The notes beneath the pieces were generated by a model that searched no databases, was not told the origin of the DNA, and was given only the letters and a program-made list of their open reading frames with translations. Below, one piece after another: positions 1 through 7,415 of a stretch of DNA of 7,415 nucleotides (positions are counted from its first letter, which is position 1; every line of letters starts with the position of its first letter). The stretch is from assembly GCF_000142905.1 (NCBI RefSeq), contig NW_013657581.1, forward strand, positions 1 to 7,415, given 5' to 3'. Source of the DNA: Thecamonas trahens ATCC 50062 (Eukaryota > Protista > Apusomonadida). The position numbers and the translations under genes are program-made.

Positions 1-3000
1 CGGTCTGCTGGTGTGGTTGTGGGTGTGGGTGTGGGTGGGTGGGTGTGGCGGGTGGCGGGTGGCGGGTGGCGGGTGGCGGGTGGCGGGTGGCGCGAGGACC
101 TGCAGCCGGCAACCGATGACGACATCTACGGCACGGTGACGGAGGGCATTCGTGGCTCATCGATATTTGCCAGTGAGCGTATTTTCGAGACGGCGGTGGA
201 CATCGACTGCGATGGGCGGCGGGATGTGGCGGCGCACTCGCGGTACGGCATGACTTTCCTCCCGTCGTCATCGCCGTTTACTCGCCAGTATCCCTCGACG
301 GCTGGCGTGCCAGTGGACGGCGTGGCGCAGTTTGAGCCGGCGGATGATGGCATGAAGCTGAGCGGATGCATAGCGGCGGAGATGGGCCCGGCGGGCATGC
401 AGGCGGATACGTGGGCAACGCCGGTGTATGTTTCTCCGGGAGCAACTGGAATGCTGTCGTCGAGTGTGAGCGACGCGTGGGCTGGAGACTTGAACGGCGA
501 TGGAGTGCCCGAGTTTGTGACGGCCGAGAATCCCGGGATCAAGGTGATGACCGGGAGCACGACGCGGCGATGGCCCAAGTACATGGGCGAGGTGGTGATG
601 AAGGCTGGAGCGACGGCACTCTCAAACACGGAGCAGCGATTCTTCATCGCCGACATGGACAACGACGGCGACAACGACGTTGTTTGGTGGGCGTACGCGA
701 CGTCGTCATCGTACTACCATGAGGTTGTGTGGTTTGCCAACTATGGCAACGGCACGCTTGATGAGACGCCGCGGCTCATTGCGCCGTACTTGTCGACGTA
801 TCCGCGGGCCATTGATGTGGCGGACGTCAACGGCGACGGGTGGCCTGACGTGGTTCTGCAGCGGATGAGCGGGGCAACTGAGGTGTGGCATACGACCGGG
901 CCAGGAGTGTTTGGCGCGAGCGCGGTGATGCTCACACCCTCGCAGGTGCGCTCGTCGTACCTGCAGTTTTTCGACTATGATGCGGACGGCGACCTGGACG
1001 TGCTGCTAGAGGCCAACGTGGACGACACGCTTGTGGTGTACGTTAACTCGGCTGGGCCTGGGGCCAACTTTGCGCTTGGGACGATGGTCGCACTCGGTAA
1101 CCGAGACAATCTCAACTCGATTGCGATTGCGGACCTGGACAACGATGGCGACGATGATGTGGTGTACACCCTCTACGAGCTGGACTTGGTTGTCATTCTC
1201 CGCAACGAGGGTGGCGGGAGCTTTGTGCCCGAAGACACGGTGACGATTGACGGGCCGCACAACATCCGGCTGGGCGACATCAACAATGACACGTATCCGG
1301 ACGTGTGCGGCAAGGTCCGCAGCAACCGGTTCTTCTGTGCGCTGTACAATCCGAGCAGCGGACTCGCTGGATCGTACGACGAGTATGTGCTGATGCAGTC
1401 GGGCTGGGGCGTGTACCCGACGACATTTGAGCTGGTGGATATGGATGGCGACGGAATGCTTGACCTAGTGGCACAGCCGACTGGCAGGGAAGGCGAGGCA
1501 GTGACGAGCGCGGTTGTGTACTACCGCAACCAGTGGCCGGAGCTTGCATTTGTGTACGACCGCAATCGACCGATCCCGATTGTCGGTGGGAGTCTTGGGC
1601 GGGGCGGGAGGCGGTCGTTCGGCGACCTCGATGGCGACGGAGTGCCGGATTTTGTGGTTGTCCACCCGCACATCCACCGGTTTGCGGTGGCAGTGTACGT
1701 GACAGCTGGGCCGGGAACGCGGACGGGCGGGCCCGGCATGCTGGCGTATGACGGCGGCCAGGCTGAGCTTGTGGCGACAGCTACTGACCAGGTCATCCAT
1801 CTCGCCGTCGACGATTTTGACAGCGACGGCGACTACGATGTGGTGTACGCGACATATGTGGGTAATACCGGCAAGTCGACGGTAGAGTATGCGAAGAACG
1901 CGTATGGCGGAACGCCTGGTGCGCCTGTGGCGTTTGGGACTGCAGTCGTGCTAGGCGAGTCGCAGGCCTTTCGCGAGGTCCCGACTCAGCTGGTTGTCGT
2001 TGATGCAGATGGCGATGGCAACGCGCGTGAGGTTGTTGTTGGCTGGCGGTCGCTGCAATCGTTTGGCAACAACGTGTATGGGTTCATCACGCTGTACGAG
2101 GTGGATGACTGGACCAGCGCTAGCGCAAGCGCCGTGGCGACCGTCATTGCTGACGACCTTCCTGCGACGAGCGGACTGGCAGCAGTGGACATGGACCTCG
2201 ACGGGAGTCTTGATCTTGTGGTGACTCGGGAATTGCAGTTGTTCGCGCTGCTGAGTCTCGGCAGGCCACTGCGCGAGCTGCCAACGGCGGGGCGGCGGCT
2301 GTTCCTTGGCGAGATCCAGACGGGGCGGTCGTCGAACCAGATTGATCTTGCGGTGGCGTCGCTCAACCCGGGCGAGGATAGCGAGCTGGACATTGTGGCG
2401 CTGGTGAGCGGGCTGGAGCCTGTTGTCATGATGGGCCTGCCAGGCAACGCGAGTGCACCGGTGCGGGTGAAGGATCACACGGCAATGCCGATGGCGGGCA
2501 TCGGCGGGAGCTCCTTTGCGCTCACCGACTACGACAGTGATGGGTTTGTGGACGTGGTGCTTGCTGCTGGCTCGTTTGTTTGGATGCCGAACCTCGGGTA
2601 TGCAGGTGCTGTCAAGGGCTATGACGAGGTTGCGTACGAAGCGATATACCAAATCGACTCGTCGACGGTGGCGGACTTTGACCGCGACTCGCAGCTCGAC
2701 TTTGTTGTGTTTGACGGGAATGGGGTTGATACCGGCGAGTTGAAGCTGTTTGTGGACGGCCCGCTCTTTGCGAGCCCGCTGGTCATCGACGTGTCGGCCG
2801 CCGGCAGTCACATGAAGTGTATGGTGGCTACAGACGTGGACCTGGACGGGCTGGTAGACATTATTTTTTCGACGGCGGATCCGGCAAACGTGGTCGGCTG
2901 GCTCCCGAACGCCGGCGTTGCGCCTTTCTTTACCAGTGAGACTCTGGTGGAGATTGTCAACACCACGGATGTGCTCGACGACGCGCTGGACTTTGACGCA

Positions 3001-6000
3001 GCTATGTTGGACGACGACGCGTATGTGGATGTGATTGCGTTGGGCCGTGACAGCCTCAACCTGGTGTTCATCCGCGGTAGCGCAGAGTCGCCGACGCGGT
3101 TTGAGAACGAGGTGGAGATCGCGAGCTGGACGACGGCGGTGTGCAATAACCCGTTGCGAATGGAACTTGGCGACGCGACAGGCGACGGTTTGCAGGACGT
3201 GATTGTGGCATGCCACTCGAACGGTGCTGTGGTGTTCTTTGCATCCGAGCCCGTGGCTGAGTTGTCGGACGCGCCGTGGGCGGTATCGTCACCCGAGGTA
3301 CTTGTGGCACGCGGTGGCTCGTACAACGCTTACGATGTGATCTTTGCTGACCTCAACGGCGATTCTCTGCTTGATGTGGTGTACACTGTCGATGACTATA
3401 GCCCCGGCCCGGTGTCGTACTTTATCAACGTCGGCAACGAGACGCATCCGCTATGGCCAGCCCTGCAGGACCGGCACTATCCGGACGACTGGGCGACGTT
3501 TGACCGACTTGACGGCTACCAGTGCCGATATGGACGGGCGTTGCAGGTTATCGACCTTGATATGGATGGGTACGACGACATTCTTGTCGGCTGCTCGACA
3601 GCTCGGACACCGGTCCTGCTCAACCAGACACCGCGTCTGCCCGCGAGCGCGTTCAACGACACGGATACAGGAGTTGGCGCTAGCCGATTGGTTGCAGCGA
3701 CTCGGTGGTACCAGCAGGGCTCCACCAGCCGCCGCGGCTACATGGACCGCATTGCCGTGGCTGACGTCGATGCCGATGGCTTCCCGGACTGGCTCACGTC
3801 GTCTGAACACACCTCGAGCGAGCGGGCGGTGTACTCGGGGACAAACTCGGTGTGGCAGACGCCGCGGCCGCCTACGACGTTCCGGGTCGAGGTTGAGCGA
3901 TGCGGGTACACGATGACGTGTGTGGCGGCGTCGGTGACGCGATGGGTCGGGCAGTGCAACGGCGACACGGTCCTGCTTCCGGCCGGGCGGTACACCGGAT
4001 GCTGGCGCGATGTGCCGTACACGGTGGCCAAGTCTGTGCGACTTCTAGGCGAGGGCCCAGGCGCGGTGCTTGACTGCACGGCCGGCGAGCGGAGCGACGA
4101 CGACGGTGCGCTGCTGTTCCGTGTGGAAGGGAGCACGACGGTGCTGAAAATGGAGAACATGATTGTGCTCGGAGCGCGGACGAACAAGGCTGTGTTTGGC
4201 GGCGGCAGCATCGAAGTTGTGGGCGGACGGCTGGAGCTTGTGTCTGTGACTGTGACCAACTCGACAGCGGTGACGGCGAACCAGCTGTCTGTGGCGTCGC
4301 CTGTGATTGGGTTTGGCGGAGCGGTGCTGCTTCGCGACGGCGGGTCGCTGGTGGCACGCGACAGCGCGTTTGTGTCGAACACTGCGGAGCATTCTGGCGG
4401 AGCGATTGCGGCGGTGGGGCGCGACGTGAGCGTTGTGTTTGAGCGGGTGCGGTGCGTGAACAACCATGCGCTTGTGTCTGGCGGGTGCCTGTTCCTCGAG
4501 TCTGCAGACGGGACGTCGTTCCTGGAGATTGTAGAGTCTGTGGTGGAGGACAACGAGGCTGTGGGCCGGTCTGCGGCGATTGCGTATCCGCGGCGCGGCG
4601 GCGGCGGAGCTGTGATTGCGCTTGCGGGCAGCTTTAACGTGAGCGTGCAGCGGAGCACGATTTCGCGCAACGTGGCGCTTGAGAACGGCGGCGGGCTGTT
4701 CCTGCGGGCGTCCGGCGAGGGCCGAATTTCGGCCGAGTTTGGGACGCTGGGCGGCGGGAACGAGTCTGTGGTGTCGGACAACACGGCGCTCGGCGGGAGC
4801 GGCGGTGGGCTGCACGCGGTGTCGCTGGAGAACGGCGAGACGCGGATTGTGCTCGGAAGCGAGGCGATTGTGACGGCGAACTCTGCGAGCGGAAGCGGCG
4901 GCGGGATCGCGGCCGAGGCTGAGCGAGCGAGCCGTTTGGCGCGAGCGGCGGCGGCGGTGGTGGCGAGCGGCGCAGTTGTGAGCTCGAACGCTGCTGACGT
5001 GCACGGCGGAGGCGTGGCCGGAAGTGGGCGTGGGGCGGACGGCCAGCTGACAGGCAGCACGCTGGCGGAGAACCGGGCGCGGCGGATCGGCGGAGCGGTG
5101 AGCGCGATCGGCGGCGGGCGGATGGTTGTCGATGGCTGCGTTGTCCGCGACAACGAGGCGGCGTTTGGCGGGGTGGGCGGAGCGACGTCCGGGGTCGACT
5201 ACCTTGCCGGGACGGCGACGAAGAACGGCCAGGCGATCGAGGCATCGTCGGCGTCGCTGGAGGCGCTGCTGATTGAGGACGAAGTTACGCTTGGCGAAGG
5301 AAGTCTGTACAGCTGCGCGGAGCGCGGCGGGGTGTTTGTGCGCTCGAGCGTGCTGATGCGGAACTCTGCGGTGCACGGGAGCGTGGGCTTTGGGTGTGGG
5401 TCGCGGGTGAGCGTGGAGGGGACGGGAAGCGGGTTTGAGTTTGACGTGTCCGCCAAGCCGAACGGCAACGACGTGGGCTCTGGACTGTTCTTCAGCTGCC
5501 TGCCTGAGGGCGGGCTGTGTGGGATGGCGGGCGATCCGTGCTGTCTGGCCGAGTCGCCTGCGGAGCTGCGCGGGCTGCCGTGGGCGAGCGCGTCGAGCGG
5601 GATGCTTGGGGCGTTCAACCAGAGCCTGGACAAGGTGCAGAGCGTGGTCGGATACGGGGCGATGGCGGCGATGCCTGTGGTGTCGCTGCAGTGGATGGCG
5701 GGTCTGCCGGAGCTTGTGTCGTCGGGAGCGCCGTTTGGGAGCGGGTACGGAGTGGTGACTGGTCGGGACGCGCTCGGACAAGTGGTTGTTGACCCGCAGC
5801 TGATGCTCTCGATGGAGTTTGAGGACGGGGCAAAGGAGGCCGAGTTTGCGTTTGTGGGCTCTGGGCGGCAGCAGCTGATGACCGATGCCGAGCTGTCGTT
5901 TGGCGGAGTAGGGATTGCAGCGCGGAGCGGGGCCGAGGTGGGAGTGCCGATTGCGGTGCAGATTGCGGTTGCGCAGTCTGCGATTCCACTGGAGCTTGTG

Positions 6001-7415
6001 CCGGATGCGATTGTGCGCGACTCTGTGGTTGTGCAGGCGTGCCTGCCGGGGTCTGGAGCGATTATCAGGCCGGGCTCGACTGTGCTCGAGTGCACGCTGT
6101 GCGCCGAGGGCACGTTCTCGAATGCGACGTCGCTCGAGCCGTGCAAGATCTGCCCGGCGTCGACGGTGCTGACTGGGCAAGGGGCAACCGAGTGTCTGGC
6201 GTGCCCGGAGAACGCGCAGGTCATTCCCGGGTTTGTGCCCGAGCCTGGACTCGGACTCAACTGCTCGTGCATTCCCGGGTTCTGGACGGCGACGGGACAG
6301 ATCAATGTGGGGTGCGAGGCGTGTCCGGAGGGGGCCAAGTGCGACGGCGGGCAGTCGTTGCCTGTGGCACGGCCTGGGTTTTTCCCGACGGAGGATCCTG
6401 GGGTGTTCCTGGAGTGCCCGAACGCCGGGGCGTGCAAGGGCGGGTTCCCGTTCCGGTGCACGGAGGGGTACACCGGACAGCTGTGCGGAGCGTGCGATCG
6501 CGGGTACTATGCGCTGAGCGGATCGTGCTACAAGTGTGACAACCGGACGCTGCCTATTTTCGCGGTGGTGTTTGTGCTCGCGGTGTGCTTTGTGGGCCTG
6601 CTCGTGTGGCTCAACGCCAAGGAGGAGCTGAGCTACCGGTTTGCGGCTGTGATGATCGGGTTCAACTCGCTGCAGATCAGCGCGATGTACGGGCAGTTTG
6701 AGCTGCCGTGGTCGAACTTTGCGTCGCAGTTTTTCAACGTGGTCTCGTTCTTCAACCTCAACTTTGACCTGAGCTCGCCCGAGTGTGCGACGGTGACGGA
6801 CGATGTGTGGCTGCTCAAGTGGTGGATGACGGTGAGTCTGCCGCTGCTGTTTGTTGTACCGTTTGCGATTGTGTATTGCAGCGTGATGGTGAACAAGCAC
6901 CACCTTGCGCCGCGGCTGGGGCATGTGGTGCTGATTACGGGTGGAGCGCTGCGCGACGCGTGCCGGCGTGCGTACCTGCAGCTGATGGTGCTGCTGTACC
7001 TGCCGCTTGCGGCGATGGCGATGAGCTACCTGCAGTGCCGGCGCGACAAGGACGGGCGGTGGGTGCTCGAGGCTGCACCGGCGAAGAGCTGCTACGGGAC
7101 GTGGTACTGGAACTACTTTGGAGTTGCGGTTGTGTTCTGCGTGGTGTACTGCCTGGGGCTGCCGTCGCTTGTGTTCTACCTGCTGACGCGGGTGCGGAGC
7201 GTGGCGGATCCTGTGCTGTTCAGTCTGCGGTACGCGTTCCTTGTGGGGCGGTTCTCGCCGGCCAACTACCGGTTCGAGGTGTGGATTATGGCGCGCAAGG
7301 TGAGCGTGGTGATGGCGATGACGTTTTTCCGTCCGCCGATGACCAAGGCGAACGTGGCGCTGTTTGCGCTTGTGGTGTCTATGTGCCAGCTGGTGCGGTT
7401 CCTGCCGTACGACAC
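1..7415 (+). CDS. Giant cell-surface receptor/adhesin-like polytopic membrane protein (FG-GAP beta-propellers + Pmp-like beta-helix + Cys-rich GCC2/GCC3 repeats + multi-TM domain); partial, open at the 3' end and probably at the 5' end
   Basis: Frame +1 translated by hand has no stop from 1 to 7413. It reads ...EDLQPATDDDIYGTVTEGIRGSSIFASERIFETAVDIDCDGRRDVAAHS... through to ...VALFALVVSMCQLVRFLPYD at the window end. Recognisable domains follow in logical order in this one frame, and codon third positions are GC-biased. The first in-frame ATG (250) lies after the first FG-GAP motif (199), so the true start is probably upstream of the window. Whether bases 1-105 are coding is uncertain. Confidence 0.95.
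10..46 (+). repeat. G/T-only microsatellite: (GTGGGT)x3 at 19-36 overlapping (GGGT)x3 at 33-44
   Basis: Read directly from the sequence. It is contiguous with the heptamer repeat, and positions 1-94 contain no A at all. Confidence 0.9.
47..92 (+). repeat. Perfect heptanucleotide tandem repeat (GGCGGGT)x6 plus partial GGCG
   Basis: Units at 47-53, 54-60, 61-67, 68-74, 75-81 and 82-88, then GGCG at 89-92. Confidence 0.97.
181..3850 (+). other. FG-GAP/VCBS-like (integrin-alpha N-terminal-like) beta-propeller repeat region, about 21 calcium-blade motifs
   Basis: Motif starts: 199 DIDCDGRRD, 487 DLNGDGVPE, 652 DMDNDGDND, 823 DVNGDGWPD, 973 DYDADGDLD, 1132 DLDNDGDDD, 1276 DINNDTYPD, 1438 DMDGDGMLD, 1624 DLDGDGVPD, 1813 DFDSDGDYD, 2002 DADGDGNARE, 2188 DMDLDGSLD, 2359 SLNPGEDSELD (degenerate), 2527 DYDSDGFVD, 2674 DFDRDSQLD, 2833 DVDLDGLVD, 3004 MLDDDAYVD (degenerate), 3172 DATGDGLQD, 3349 DLNGDSLLD, 3553 DLDMDGYDD, 3763 DVDADGFPD. 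Spacing is mostly 48-70 aa. Motifs are followed by a hydrophobic strand and often a 'W/Y-x-x-N-x-G' strand. Confidence 0.93.
3880..5400 (+). other. Right-handed parallel beta-helix (pectin lyase fold; Chlamydia polymorphic membrane protein-like GGA[IV]/xxxNxA repeats)
   Basis: Typical N-terminal cap GDTVLLPAGRYTGC...KSVRLLGEGPGAVLDC (3961-4077). Recurrent coils follow: GGSI 4201, GGAV 4315, FVSNTA..GGAI 4369/4396, CVNNHA..GGCL 4480, VEDNEA..GGAV 4603, ISRNVA..GGGL 4687, VSDNTA..GGGL 4801, VTANSA..GGGI 4897, VSSNAA..GGGV 5005, LAENRA..GGAV 5089, VRDNEA.FGGV 5167, LMRNSAVHGSV ~5353-5385. Confidence 0.88.
5640..6036 (+). other. Probable Ig-like/beta-sandwich spacer domain
   Basis: About 130 aa rich in alternating hydrophobic beta-strand patterns, containing 'VVTGRDALGQVV' (a D-x-x-G-Q/N turn often seen in Ig-like stalks before Cys-rich repeats). 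It ends in 'SVVVQAC'. The fold is inferred. Confidence 0.45.
6040..6537 (+). other. Cys-rich GCC2/GCC3 (ephrin-receptor-like / growth-factor-receptor Cys-rich) repeats and juxtamembrane Cys module
   Basis: CLPGS...ECTLCAEGTFSNATSLEPCKICPAST...GATECLACPENA...NCSCIPGFW...GCEACPEGAKCDGG...PGFF...ECPNAGACKGG...CTEGYTGQLCGACDRGYY...CYKC. I count 19 Cys in 166 aa with CxxCPxG periodicity. Confidence 0.9.
6550..7415 (+). other. Polytopic alpha-helical membrane domain (at least 7 hydrophobic segments, truncated by the window end), GPCR-related/TRP-like type
   Basis: Hydrophobic segments at ~6550-6612 (LPIFAVVFVLAVCFVGLLVWL), ~6640-6690, ~6805-6891, ~6970-7032, ~7117-7185, ~7273-7329 and ~7354-7395. 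Motifs LQI...LPW, FNLN...PEC, LLYLP...QC, L-x-A-x-P-xxx-CY, GLP, RYAFLVGRF...YRFEVWIMARK and a terminal PY match my recollection of the protist 'G protein-coupled receptor-related' (PTHR11319-like)/fungal Flc-Pkd2 TRP-like module. Confidence 0.8.

What the first reader, a model, noticed from the sequence alone, without database searches (positions are those of the whole stretch)
1..7415. Hidden >2400-aa receptor joining integrin-like propellers, a Pmp-like beta-helix, Cys-rich repeats and a GPCR/TRP-like membrane domain
Seen: a stop-free frame +1 across the whole window, absent from the ORF track, with the domain order (FG-GAP)~21 - beta-helix - Ig-like - GCC2/GCC3 - at least 7 TM. Known: FG-GAP propellers are Ca2+-dependent adhesion/lectin modules (integrin alpha, fungal lectins, bacterial VCBS proteins). 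GGA(I/L/V)/FxxN beta-helices are adhesin passengers in Chlamydia Pmps. Beta-helix/Cys-rich/multi-TM proteins occur in many protists but are essentially uncharacterised. Inference: this is an adhesion-GPCR- or polycystin-like analogue in which a long rigid ectodomain couples surface or prey binding, or mechanical load, to a signalling or channel-like membrane module. It is a candidate undescribed sensory/adhesion system in a unicellular eukaryote. I know of no functional description of this exact architecture but cannot verify novelty without a search.
Basis: partly seen in the sequence, partly recalled or inferred. Interest (0 to 1): 0.8.

Follow-up and report, generated by a model that had tools for sequence, protein, structure and literature searches.

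The report
Propeller–β-helix receptor on TRP-like membrane domain
The window holds most of one real gene of the flagellate Thecamonas trahens: a giant surface protein with integrin-like propellers, a β-helix and a cysteine-rich stalk on a nine-helix membrane domain related to the fungal Flc/Pkd2 "TRP-like" family. It is one of dozens of near-identical designs in that genome, already in public databases but never studied.

Summary
Frame +1 is open over all 2471 codons, and the domain order is confirmed:
- about 19–22 FG-GAP blades
- a right-handed β-helix
- a β-sandwich
- a TNFR/Ephrin-receptor-like Cys-rich stalk with DUF7630
- a multi-pass membrane domain

The gene is neither hidden nor unique. 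The window is a whole 7.4-kb contig of Thecamonas trahens ATCC 50062 and is cut at both ends. It lacks the signal-peptide exon and the last two helices plus the tail. A gene model already exists on it.

The membrane module has at least 100 paralogous loci in this genome. It matches 17,891 protein clusters (50% identity) across eukaryotes. At least 30 T. trahens loci carry FG-GAP repeats upstream of this module. The scan's first readers flagged the same design on at least nine other pieces of this genome.

The module is not a 7TM GPCR and not a canonical TRP/polycystin fold. It is a divergent relative of Pfam PF06011 ("TRP", the fungal Flc/Pkd2 family; hhalign probability 92%). It resembles the core of apicomplexan CRMPs, but that link was not tested directly.

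The most likely role is a contact or adhesion sensor that couples a variable ectodomain to a possibly Ca2+-permeable membrane module. The nearest copy is 99.8% identical in the stem but only 40–84% identical in the propellers.

The parts
1..105 (+). Non-coding lead-in, probably the 3' end of an intron. It holds (GGTGTG)n and (GGGTGGC)n microsatellites at nt 10-92, followed by a possible 'cag' acceptor at nt 103-105.
   Evidence: Tandem repeats and sequence. This stretch matches many dispersed loci in the genome, and homology to the C62 copy starts at nt 103. Paralogues L015 and L017 have a short upstream exon encoding a signal peptide, then an intron. The annotated P0005 model joins such an exon.
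106..7413 (+). Partial coding exon, about 2436 codons, of a T. trahens surface receptor-like protein. It is cut at the 3' end by the contig end.
   Evidence: Open frame. A gene model P0002 covers aa 33-2468. Collinear homologues P0003-P0010 align over the full length.
163..3900 (+). About 19-22 FG-GAP blades with Ca2+-loop motifs (aa 55-1300), enough for three seven-bladed beta-propellers.
   Evidence: Pfam FG-GAP_3 E=4.7e-51 and FG-GAP E=1.1e-20. 17 strict loops against 0.25 in shuffles. 19 blades by self-HMM. The three-propeller grouping is inferred from the blade count and was not modelled.
3958..5430 (+). Right-handed parallel beta-helix, about aa 1320-1810, with recurring NxAxxxGG turns.
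   Evidence: AF2 model m791068986a05, pLDDT 84.6, with a periodic three-strand pattern. Foldseek hits to AlgE4/AlgE6, PL6 lyases, PfbA and tailspikes. Consensus in A3.
5431..6024 (+). Linker with short helices, then a beta-sandwich domain at about aa 1890-2008.
   Evidence: Secondary structure of the AF2 model, residues 540-718, pLDDT about 90. It was not searched as a separate domain.
6025..6540 (+). Cys-rich stalk, aa 2009-2180: TNFR/Ephrin_rec_like repeats, with DUF7630 (aa 2136-2179) directly before the first membrane helix.
   Evidence: Sub-threshold Pfam hits. All 20 paralogues checked have 15-19 Cys in the 180 aa before TM1. Invariant Cys columns in A2. Foldseek hits to OX40 and CD40.
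6541..7413 (+). Helices 1-7 of a nine-helix membrane domain distantly related to PF06011 (Flc/Pkd2 'TRP-like'). It is truncated by the contig end.
   Evidence: Alignment A1. AF2 model with pLDDT 83.8 and pTM 0.81. hhalign of A1 against a bona fide PF06011 member of the same genome gives probability 91.8%, E=7.5e-7. The remaining 2 helices and a 240-aa Ser-rich tail are seen in the C62 copy, which differs at 1 of 819 residues.

Best explanation
The window is a 5'- and 3'-truncated copy of a real Thecamonas trahens gene.

The deduced layout is:
- a signal peptide, inferred from paralogues and missing here
- about three Ca2+-loop FG-GAP propellers
- a ~490-aa right-handed beta-helix
- a beta-sandwich
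- a TNFR/Ephrin-receptor-like Cys-rich stalk ending in DUF7630
- a nine-helix membrane domain
- a Ser-rich cytoplasmic tail

The membrane domain is a divergent member of the superfamily around Pfam PF06011 (fungal Flc1-3 and S. pombe Pkd2). This family is pan-eukaryotic, and different lineages mount different ectodomains on the same Cys-rich/9-TM chassis.

Proposed mechanism (inferred, not shown). The propellers and beta-helix bind carbohydrate or surface ligands on prey, substrate or other cells. Binding or mechanical load is passed through the rigid disulphide-rich stalk to the membrane domain. That domain then signals, most plausibly by letting Ca2+ through. Stretch-activated Ca2+ permeation has been shown for reconstituted S. 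pombe Pkd2. CRMP complexes that trigger exocytosis on host contact are a second possible analogue.

The gene belongs to a large paralogous repertoire in which the recognition end diversifies while the stem is kept identical.
For: Shown:
- The organism and the existing gene models.
- Every ectodomain module.
- The membrane module is conserved in at least 100 loci of the genome, inside open frames of 300-6353 aa.
- The A1 profile matches 17,891 clusters at E<=1e-3. Hits come from Anaeramoeba ('G protein-coupled receptor-related'), Mantamonas and Fabomonas. Those carry TIG, He_PIG or Pmp-type ectodomains.
- ESM-Atlas shape matches score TM 0.75-0.85 to clusters carrying DUF7630, Ephrin_rec_like, PF06011, LRR or TIR.
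- PF06011 link: 7 of 21 paralogues hit it weakly. Three strong A1 hits pass its threshold. Several T. trahens loci hit both by the window's membrane domain and by PF06011 pass its threshold; C9:446k, C28:282k, C47:32k, C63:85k and C17:515k were cross-checked by hand. hhalign gives probability 91.8%.
- Full-length homologues P0009 and P0010 start with signal peptides.
- The window and its C62 copy are 99.8% identical at DNA level from nt ~3850 on. Protein identity in the propellers is a mosaic of 40-84%.

From the literature:
- Reconstituted Pkd2 passes Ca2+ on membrane stretch (PMC9727806).
- CRMPs have a conserved core of two EGF-like domains plus 9 TM helices, with variable ectodomains, and act as contact sensors for rhoptry discharge (PMC9815656, PMC9670195).
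Against: - No functional, expression or localisation data exist for any member with this architecture.
- The window's own membrane domain does not hit PF06011 directly. The link rests on paralogues and a profile comparison over 138 columns.
- Homology to CRMPs was not tested by sequence.
- The membrane fold has no solved relative, so a pore cannot be argued from structure.
- Yeast Flc proteins have also been described as flavin carriers (from my own knowledge). Channel activity is therefore not a settled property of the family.
- The three-propeller grouping and the Ca2+ binding are inferred from motifs.
Confidence: 0.55

Rival explanations
1. It is a passive adhesin or cell-coat protein. The propellers and beta-helix only stick to or build the surface coat. 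The multi-pass domain is just an anchor or a trafficking/escort module with no signalling.
For: Beta-helix and FG-GAP modules are typical of adhesins, for example the PfbA hit. The tail is low-complexity Ser-rich with no recognisable signalling domain. CRMPs have also been proposed to act as escorters (PMC9815656).
Against: A 350-aa, nine-helix domain with about 20 invariant residues, conserved across 17,891 clusters and many ectodomain types, is far more than an anchor needs. Related proteins in other lineages carry TIR, START or EF-hand parts.
Confidence: 0.2
2. It is a transporter or carrier like the yeast Flc proteins. The membrane domain moves a small molecule such as a flavin, and the ectodomain only positions or regulates it.
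For: The membrane domain is related to PF06011. Yeast members of that family were named flavin carriers (from my own knowledge).
Against: A 2100-aa adhesive ectodomain, and a repertoire of at least 100 with variable ectodomains, is not what a housekeeping carrier looks like. T. trahens has a much closer PF06011 member that could fill that role: C43:258785, 80.5 bits.
Confidence: 0.1
3. It is a G-protein-coupled, adhesion-GPCR-like receptor, as the first reader proposed and as the PANTHER-derived database name suggests.
For: The layout is analogous: a big adhesive ectodomain on a multi-pass domain. Relatives are named 'G protein-coupled receptor-related'. Weak NCD3G-like Cys-rich hit.
Against: The model has nine helices, not seven. 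There is no significant fold match to any GPCR: GLP-1R rows have TM <= 0.24 and E > 0.1, and VIA finds only fragment matches. No 7tm or GAIN/GPS Pfam hit.
Confidence: 0.05
4. It is an assembly artefact or a dead copy. Contig C99 would be a chimeric or unplaced fragment, or a pseudogene, not an expressed gene.
For: C99 is a 7.4-kb orphan contig that ends inside a stretch about 99.8% identical to C62. It lacks the first exon. The sister copy on C62 is frameshifted relative to it.
Against: The frame is intact over 2436 codons, with all conserved residues of the family. Divergence from C62 rises gradually across nt 3850-3560 instead of switching abruptly. That pattern fits a natural conversion tract better than a mis-join.
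Confidence: 0.1

Closest known systems
Pfam PF06011 'TRP' family: S. pombe Pkd2, S. cerevisiae Flc1-3 and other fungal TRP-like proteins
   Same: A multi-helix membrane domain with shared motifs (LLYLPL, F-x-LRY-x-FL, FE-x-x-I/L-x-RK, PY), an N-terminal extracellular part and a cytoplasmic tail. Paralogues of the window's domain pass the Pfam threshold. hhalign probability 91.8%. Reconstituted Pkd2 is Ca2+-permeable on stretch (PMC9727806).
   Different: The window's own sequence does not reach PF06011. The fungal proteins are about 700-800 aa with a small lipid-binding-type ectodomain (from my own knowledge). Here the ectodomain is about 2100 aa of propellers, beta-helix and Cys-rich stalk with DUF7630.
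Apicomplexan cysteine repeat modular proteins (CRMPa/b, PfCRMP1-4, Babesia BboGDP)
   Same: A large modular ectodomain that includes Ephrin-receptor-like/EGF-like Cys repeats directly before about 9 membrane helices, in proteins of 2500+ aa. They are labelled GPCR-like by PANTHER. They act as contact sensors that trigger rhoptry exocytosis (PMC9815656, PMC9670195, PMC9843837).
   Different: CRMP ectodomains use Kringle, MAR, lectin, He_PIG and EGF modules, not FG-GAP or beta-helix. Sequence or fold homology to the Thecamonas module was not tested here: no CRMP sequence could be obtained, and the word searches failed.
Annotated T. trahens paralogues (AMSG_04305, AMSG_10925, AMSG_12401, AMSG_11685, 'SxtP protein') and metagenomic homologues P0006, P0008, P0009
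   Same: Collinear over the whole length, at 30-48% identity, with the same domain order.
   Different: They are sequence-diverged, especially in the propellers. None has been characterised.
Integrin alpha subunits
   Same: FG-GAP blades with DxDxDG Ca2+ loops.
   Different: About 21 blades instead of 7. No thigh/calf (Integrin_alpha2) domains were detected. It has a nine-helix instead of a single-pass membrane anchor, and no GFFKR-type tail.
Chlamydia polymorphic membrane proteins (Pmp)
   Same: A right-handed beta-helix with G-G-A-type turns, and one marginal TIGR01376 repeat.
   Different: The Pfam Pmp repeat is far below threshold. There is no autotransporter barrel. The fold is generic pectin-lyase type.

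Membership tests
FG-GAP / integrin-type beta-propeller repeats | Repeats that match PF13517/PF01839 above threshold and carry Ca2+-loop motifs | tested here: met
   171.7 bits (cut-off 26.9) and 73.4 bits (cut-off 22.1). 17 DxDxDGxxD loops.
Integrin alpha subunit | A single 7-bladed propeller followed by thigh/calf Ig domains and one membrane helix | tested here: not met
   No Integrin_alpha2 hit. About 21 blades. Nine-helix membrane domain.
Right-handed parallel beta-helix (pectin-lyase fold) | A three-stranded coil fold that matches solved beta-helix proteins | tested here: met
   AF2 pLDDT 84.6. Foldseek probability 0.9-1.0 to AlgE4/AlgE6, PL6 lyases, PfbA and tailspikes.
Chlamydia Pmp | Multiple PF02415 repeats above threshold and a C-terminal autotransporter barrel | tested here: not met
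   PF02415 scores 9.4 bits against 20.6. TIGR01376 gives one repeat at 15.9 against 15. No barrel; a helical membrane domain instead.
Ephrin_rec_like (GCC2/GCC3) / TNFR-like Cys-rich repeats | A PF07699 match above 23.1 bits | tested here: inconclusive
   17.8-20.7 bits. Fold hits to OX40 and CD40. Relatives pass the threshold.
DUF7630 (PF24633) | A match above 27 bits directly before the first membrane helix | tested here: inconclusive
   24.0-25.2 bits at aa 2136-2179. Paralogues are annotated with PF24633.
PF06011 'TRP' (Flc/Pkd2) | A match to the PF06011 profile above 28.5 bits | tested here: inconclusive
   The window's own domain gives no hit at E<=10. Paralogues and strong profile hits pass. 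hhalign against a bona fide member gives probability 91.8%, E=7.5e-7. So it is a distant relative, not a scored member.
7TM G-protein-coupled receptors, including adhesion GPCRs | A seven-helix GPCR fold, and a GAIN/GPS domain for the adhesion class | tested here: not met
   Nine helices. No significant GPCR fold match. No 7tm or GPS Pfam hit.
Canonical TRP / polycystin channels | A 6TM voltage-sensor-like plus pore fold (PF00520/PF08016) | tested here: not met
   No Pfam hit. TRPM3 row has TM 0.13 and E 0.12. No TRP or polycystin channel among the rows returned by VIA.
Cysteine repeat modular proteins (CRMP) | A conserved core of two EGF-like Cys modules plus about 9 membrane helices, homologous to apicomplexan CRMPs | not testable with these tools
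   The layout agrees (PMC9815656). No CRMP sequence or model could be compared: word searches failed and AlphaFold DB is not on hand.

The most novel reading that the evidence does not exclude
The ~100-member family would be a diversifying recognition repertoire of a free-living protist, for prey, substrate or self/non-self. Gene conversion would keep the beta-helix/stalk/membrane stem identical between copies while the FG-GAP propellers diverge in a mosaic. Each receptor would gate a PF06011-type Ca2+-permeable domain. This would be an innate-receptor-like system built on the same chassis that apicomplexans use (as CRMPs) to trigger invasion.
Probability: 0.15. Interest if true: 0.75.

Novelty: new variant of a known kind. 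Interest (0 to 1): 0.42.

Why it matters
Apusomonads are the sister group of animals plus fungi and are used to reconstruct the origin of adhesion and signalling. This genome carries integrin-type propellers dozens of times on a nine-helix module related to the fungal Pkd2/Flc family. That module is found across eukaryotes and has no solved structure. It may be the same chassis as the apicomplexan CRMP invasion sensors. If the contact-sensor reading is right, the family offers a free-living, non-parasitic model for how this widespread but barely studied receptor class works. The conserved-stem, variable-head pattern is also a testable case of receptor diversification in a protist. The specific window is only one truncated paralogue of an already annotated family, so by itself it adds little.

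Tried and rejected
1. The PDB sequence search with the membrane-domain profile gave 0 hits at E<=10.
3. Two word-indexed protein searches with profiles returned almost nothing. They were A2 (Cys-rich plus membrane domain) and A4 (mixed taxa). The candidate list was swamped, so they could not reach named CRMP or Dictyostelium relatives.
4. The ESM-Atlas feature searches gave only unnamed ciliate-type clusters and a PF06011 hint, with no CRMP name.
5. Cluster look-ups of the PF06011-positive bridging proteins gave no taxon, as they are metagenomic.
6. Literature searches for DUF7630 and PTHR11319 found no paper. 'Thecamonas trahens' with 'FG-GAP' found three papers, and a wider Thecamonas/GPCR/adhesion/apusomonad search listed twelve. 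Judged by title and abstract start only, none is about this architecture.
7. The in-script hydropathy scan used a faulty concatenation, so the tail was duplicated. Only its helix positions inside the window and inside the C62 ORF were used, and one search corrected the mapping.
8. No joined model was handed to any search or fold tool, neither signal-peptide exon plus main exon nor window plus C62 C-terminus. The C-terminal continuation was analysed by reference to the C62 copy (L007).
Full report
**Observation.** Translating frame +1 gives 2471 codons without a stop. G+C is 58-69%, so long antisense ORFs, such as 4045-6924 on the minus strand, are expected by-products. The frame was missing from the ORF list only because ORFs that run off both ends are not listed.

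**Where the window sits.** The window is the whole of contig C99 (7415 bp) of a 28.7-Mb, 131-contig assembly. Protein hits name the organism as Thecamonas trahens ATCC 50062. A 2436-aa gene model (P0002) already covers window aa 33-2468.

**Ends of the gene.**
- Nucleotides 10-92 are (GGTGTG)n and (GGGTGGC)n microsatellites. They match many dispersed loci.
- Similarity to the sister copy and to paralogues begins at nt 103, at a conserved 'QP(A/T)T...YG' start, right after a 'cag'.
- In paralogues L015 and L017 a short upstream ORF encodes a typical signal peptide followed by GT. The public model P0005 joins such an exon. Homologues P0009 and P0010 start with signal peptides.
- I therefore read nt 1-105 as intron, and the window as lacking exon 1.
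- The 3' end is cut inside the membrane domain. The C62 copy differs at 1 of the last 819 residues. It continues for 305 aa: two more helices and a Ser-rich tail.
The continuation was used by reference (L007).

**Ectodomain.**
- FG-GAP. Pfam gives FG-GAP_3 E=4.7e-51 (10 stretches) and FG-GAP E=1.1e-20. Seventeen strict DxDxDGxxD loops lie between aa 60 and 1265, against 0.25 in shuffles. An HMM built from them finds 19 blades and leaves three blade-sized gaps.
- Beta-helix. I aligned aa 1291-2180 with 14 homologues (A3). The AF2 model has pLDDT 84.6 and pTM 0.77. It shows a periodic three-strand coil over about aa 1320-1810.
- After the coil come short helices, a beta-sandwich (about aa 1890-2008) and a Cys-rich part.
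- Foldseek matches right-handed beta-helix proteins: AlgE4/AlgE6 epimerase modules, PL6 lyases, the PfbA adhesin and phage tailspikes. For the Cys-rich part it matches TNFR-like domains.
- The 'Pmp-like' label is not supported. PF02415 scores 9.4 bits against 20.6. There is one marginal TIGR01376 repeat.
- Ephrin_rec_like and DUF7630 sit just under their thresholds.
- All 20 paralogues examined have 15-19 Cys in the 180 aa before the first membrane helix, with many invariant Cys columns.

**Membrane domain: what it is not.** Twenty-one T. trahens paralogues align over about 350 residues with about 20 invariant positions (A1). The AF2 model (pLDDT 83.8, pTM 0.81) has about nine membrane helices and a disulphide-bearing beta-hairpin loop. 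It has no solved relative:
- 0 PDB sequence hits
- Foldseek best E 0.04 with TM <= 0.24

GPCR rows and TRPM3 are insignificant. It is therefore neither a 7TM GPCR nor a canonical TRP/polycystin fold.

**Membrane domain: what it is.**
- The ESM-Atlas shape search gives TM 0.75-0.85 to clusters from cnidarians, green algae, ciliates and haptophytes. These carry DUF7630, Ephrin_rec_like, PF06011, LRR, TIR or START.
- The exhaustive HMMER search with A1 finds 17,891 cluster representatives at E<=1e-3, 7,111 at E<=1e-10 and 468 at E<=1e-30.
- Named hits include Anaeramoeba 'G protein-coupled receptor-related', Mantamonas and Fabomonas. Their ectodomains are TIG, He_PIG plus Ephrin_rec_like, or true Pmp repeats.

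**Link to PF06011.**
- 7 of 21 paralogues hit it weakly.
- Three strong A1 hits pass its threshold.
- In the genome, 47 loci hit PF06011 and 14 are over the cut-off. Several of these are the same loci that the window's domain hits. Those cross-checked by hand are C9:446k, C28:282k, C47:32k, C63:85k and C17:515k.
- hhalign of A1 against the best PF06011 locus (C43:258785, 80.5 bits) gives probability 91.8%, E=7.5e-7 over 138 columns that contain the shared motifs.
- The window's own domain does not hit PF06011 directly. I call it a divergent relative.

**Family size and the sister copy.**
- The membrane domain has 126 matches in the genome, inside open frames of 300-6353 aa.
- The beta-helix segment has about 40 matches.
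- FG-GAP had 1223 first-look candidates, and all 150 that were scored are over threshold.
- I cross-checked the three tables by hand. At least 30 loci have FG-GAP repeats 2-5 kb upstream of a membrane domain on the same strand. At least 12 of these also show the beta-helix.
- First-stage notes of this scan list the same design on at least nine other pieces of this genome. These notes are unchecked, but they agree with my counts.
- Against its nearest copy on C62, the window is 99.8% identical from about nt 3850 to the end. There are 7 mismatches and a 1-nt deletion in C62 at window nt 4947.
- Divergence rises gradually over nt 3850-3560, with several indels in C62.
- Upstream, protein identity per 100 residues runs 84, 65, 39, 44, 43, 50, 64, 72, 43, 45, 41, 45%.
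- This is a conserved stem with a mosaic, fast-diverging head. It is best explained by gene conversion or recombination among paralogues. An assembly artefact is less likely, because the transition is graded.

**Function (inferred).**
- Pkd2, a characterised relative, passes Ca2+ on membrane stretch when reconstituted (PMC9727806).
- CRMPs share the layout of variable adhesive ectodomain, Cys modules and about 9 helices. They are proposed host-contact sensors that trigger rhoptry exocytosis and are called GPCR-like by PANTHER (PMC9670195, PMC9815656). Babesia members are 2.7 kaa with GCC2/GCC3 domains (PMC9843837).
- I therefore favour a contact or adhesion sensor, in which the propellers and beta-helix bind surface ligands and the stalk transmits binding or load to the membrane module.
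- Confidence in the identity and architecture is about 0.9. Confidence in this mechanism is about 0.35.
- Sequence homology to CRMPs could not be tested. The word searches failed and AlphaFold DB was not available.

**Novelty.** The protein and its paralogues are public, uncharacterised models. The chassis is a known family that is poorly understood. The combination with FG-GAP propellers and a beta-helix, and its expansion in an apusomonad, is not described in the papers I could search. I rate it a new variant of a known kind, of moderate interest. The window itself is an ordinary, truncated member.

Noticed in passing
window 3560-7415 versus G000:C62:34883-38733: The sister copy on C62 is 99.8% identical from about nt 3850 on. 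It carries a 1-nt deletion at window nt 4947 and several small indels at nt 3664-3795. These split it into three overlapping ORFs, and the public model AMSG_12370 (1458 aa) is truncated accordingly. They could be real frameshifts (a decaying copy) or assembly errors.
   Followed up: partly
window 106-3800 versus G000:C62:38404-42171: Mosaic protein identity of 40-84% per 100 aa in the propeller region, next to a near-identical stem. This suggests gene conversion or recombination among paralogues, with diversification of the blades.
   Followed up: partly
window 10-92: (GGTGTG)n and (GGGTGGC)n microsatellites that recur at many loci of the genome (C13, C16, C17, C19 and others). Here they sit just upstream of the main exon, probably inside the first intron.
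   Followed up: partly
G000:C43:258785-259591: The best PF06011 match in the genome: 80.5 bits, inside a 1436-aa open frame. It is probably the true Flc/Pkd2-type orthologue of T. trahens and is distinct from the expanded receptor family.
   Followed up: partly
P0005 (G000:C17:34292-42000 region, locus L017): A full-length paralogue is named 'SxtP protein' in NCBI. This is evidently an annotation carried over from FG-GAP/VCBS similarity and is not evidence of a saxitoxin-related role.
   Followed up: no
P0030 and P0168 (EukProt g10960.t1 and g10972.t1): Proteins from another eukaryote hit by the membrane-domain profiles also carry Chlamydia-Pmp repeats. PF02415 scores 52.9 bits in P0030 and is precomputed for P0168. 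A true Pmp-type beta-helix on this chassis therefore exists elsewhere.
   Followed up: partly
L059 (ENA ERZ17175005, NODE_206820, 9119 bp): A metagenomic contig carries a complete 2532-aa collinear homologue (P0006, 37% identity), so the full architecture also occurs in an uncultured relative. P0008 and P0009 have several near-identical members on other ENA contigs.
   Followed up: partly
window 4045-6924, minus strand: A 959-aa antisense ORF, with several others over 400 aa. These are expected in 65-69% G+C coding sequence and are not separate genes.
   Followed up: no
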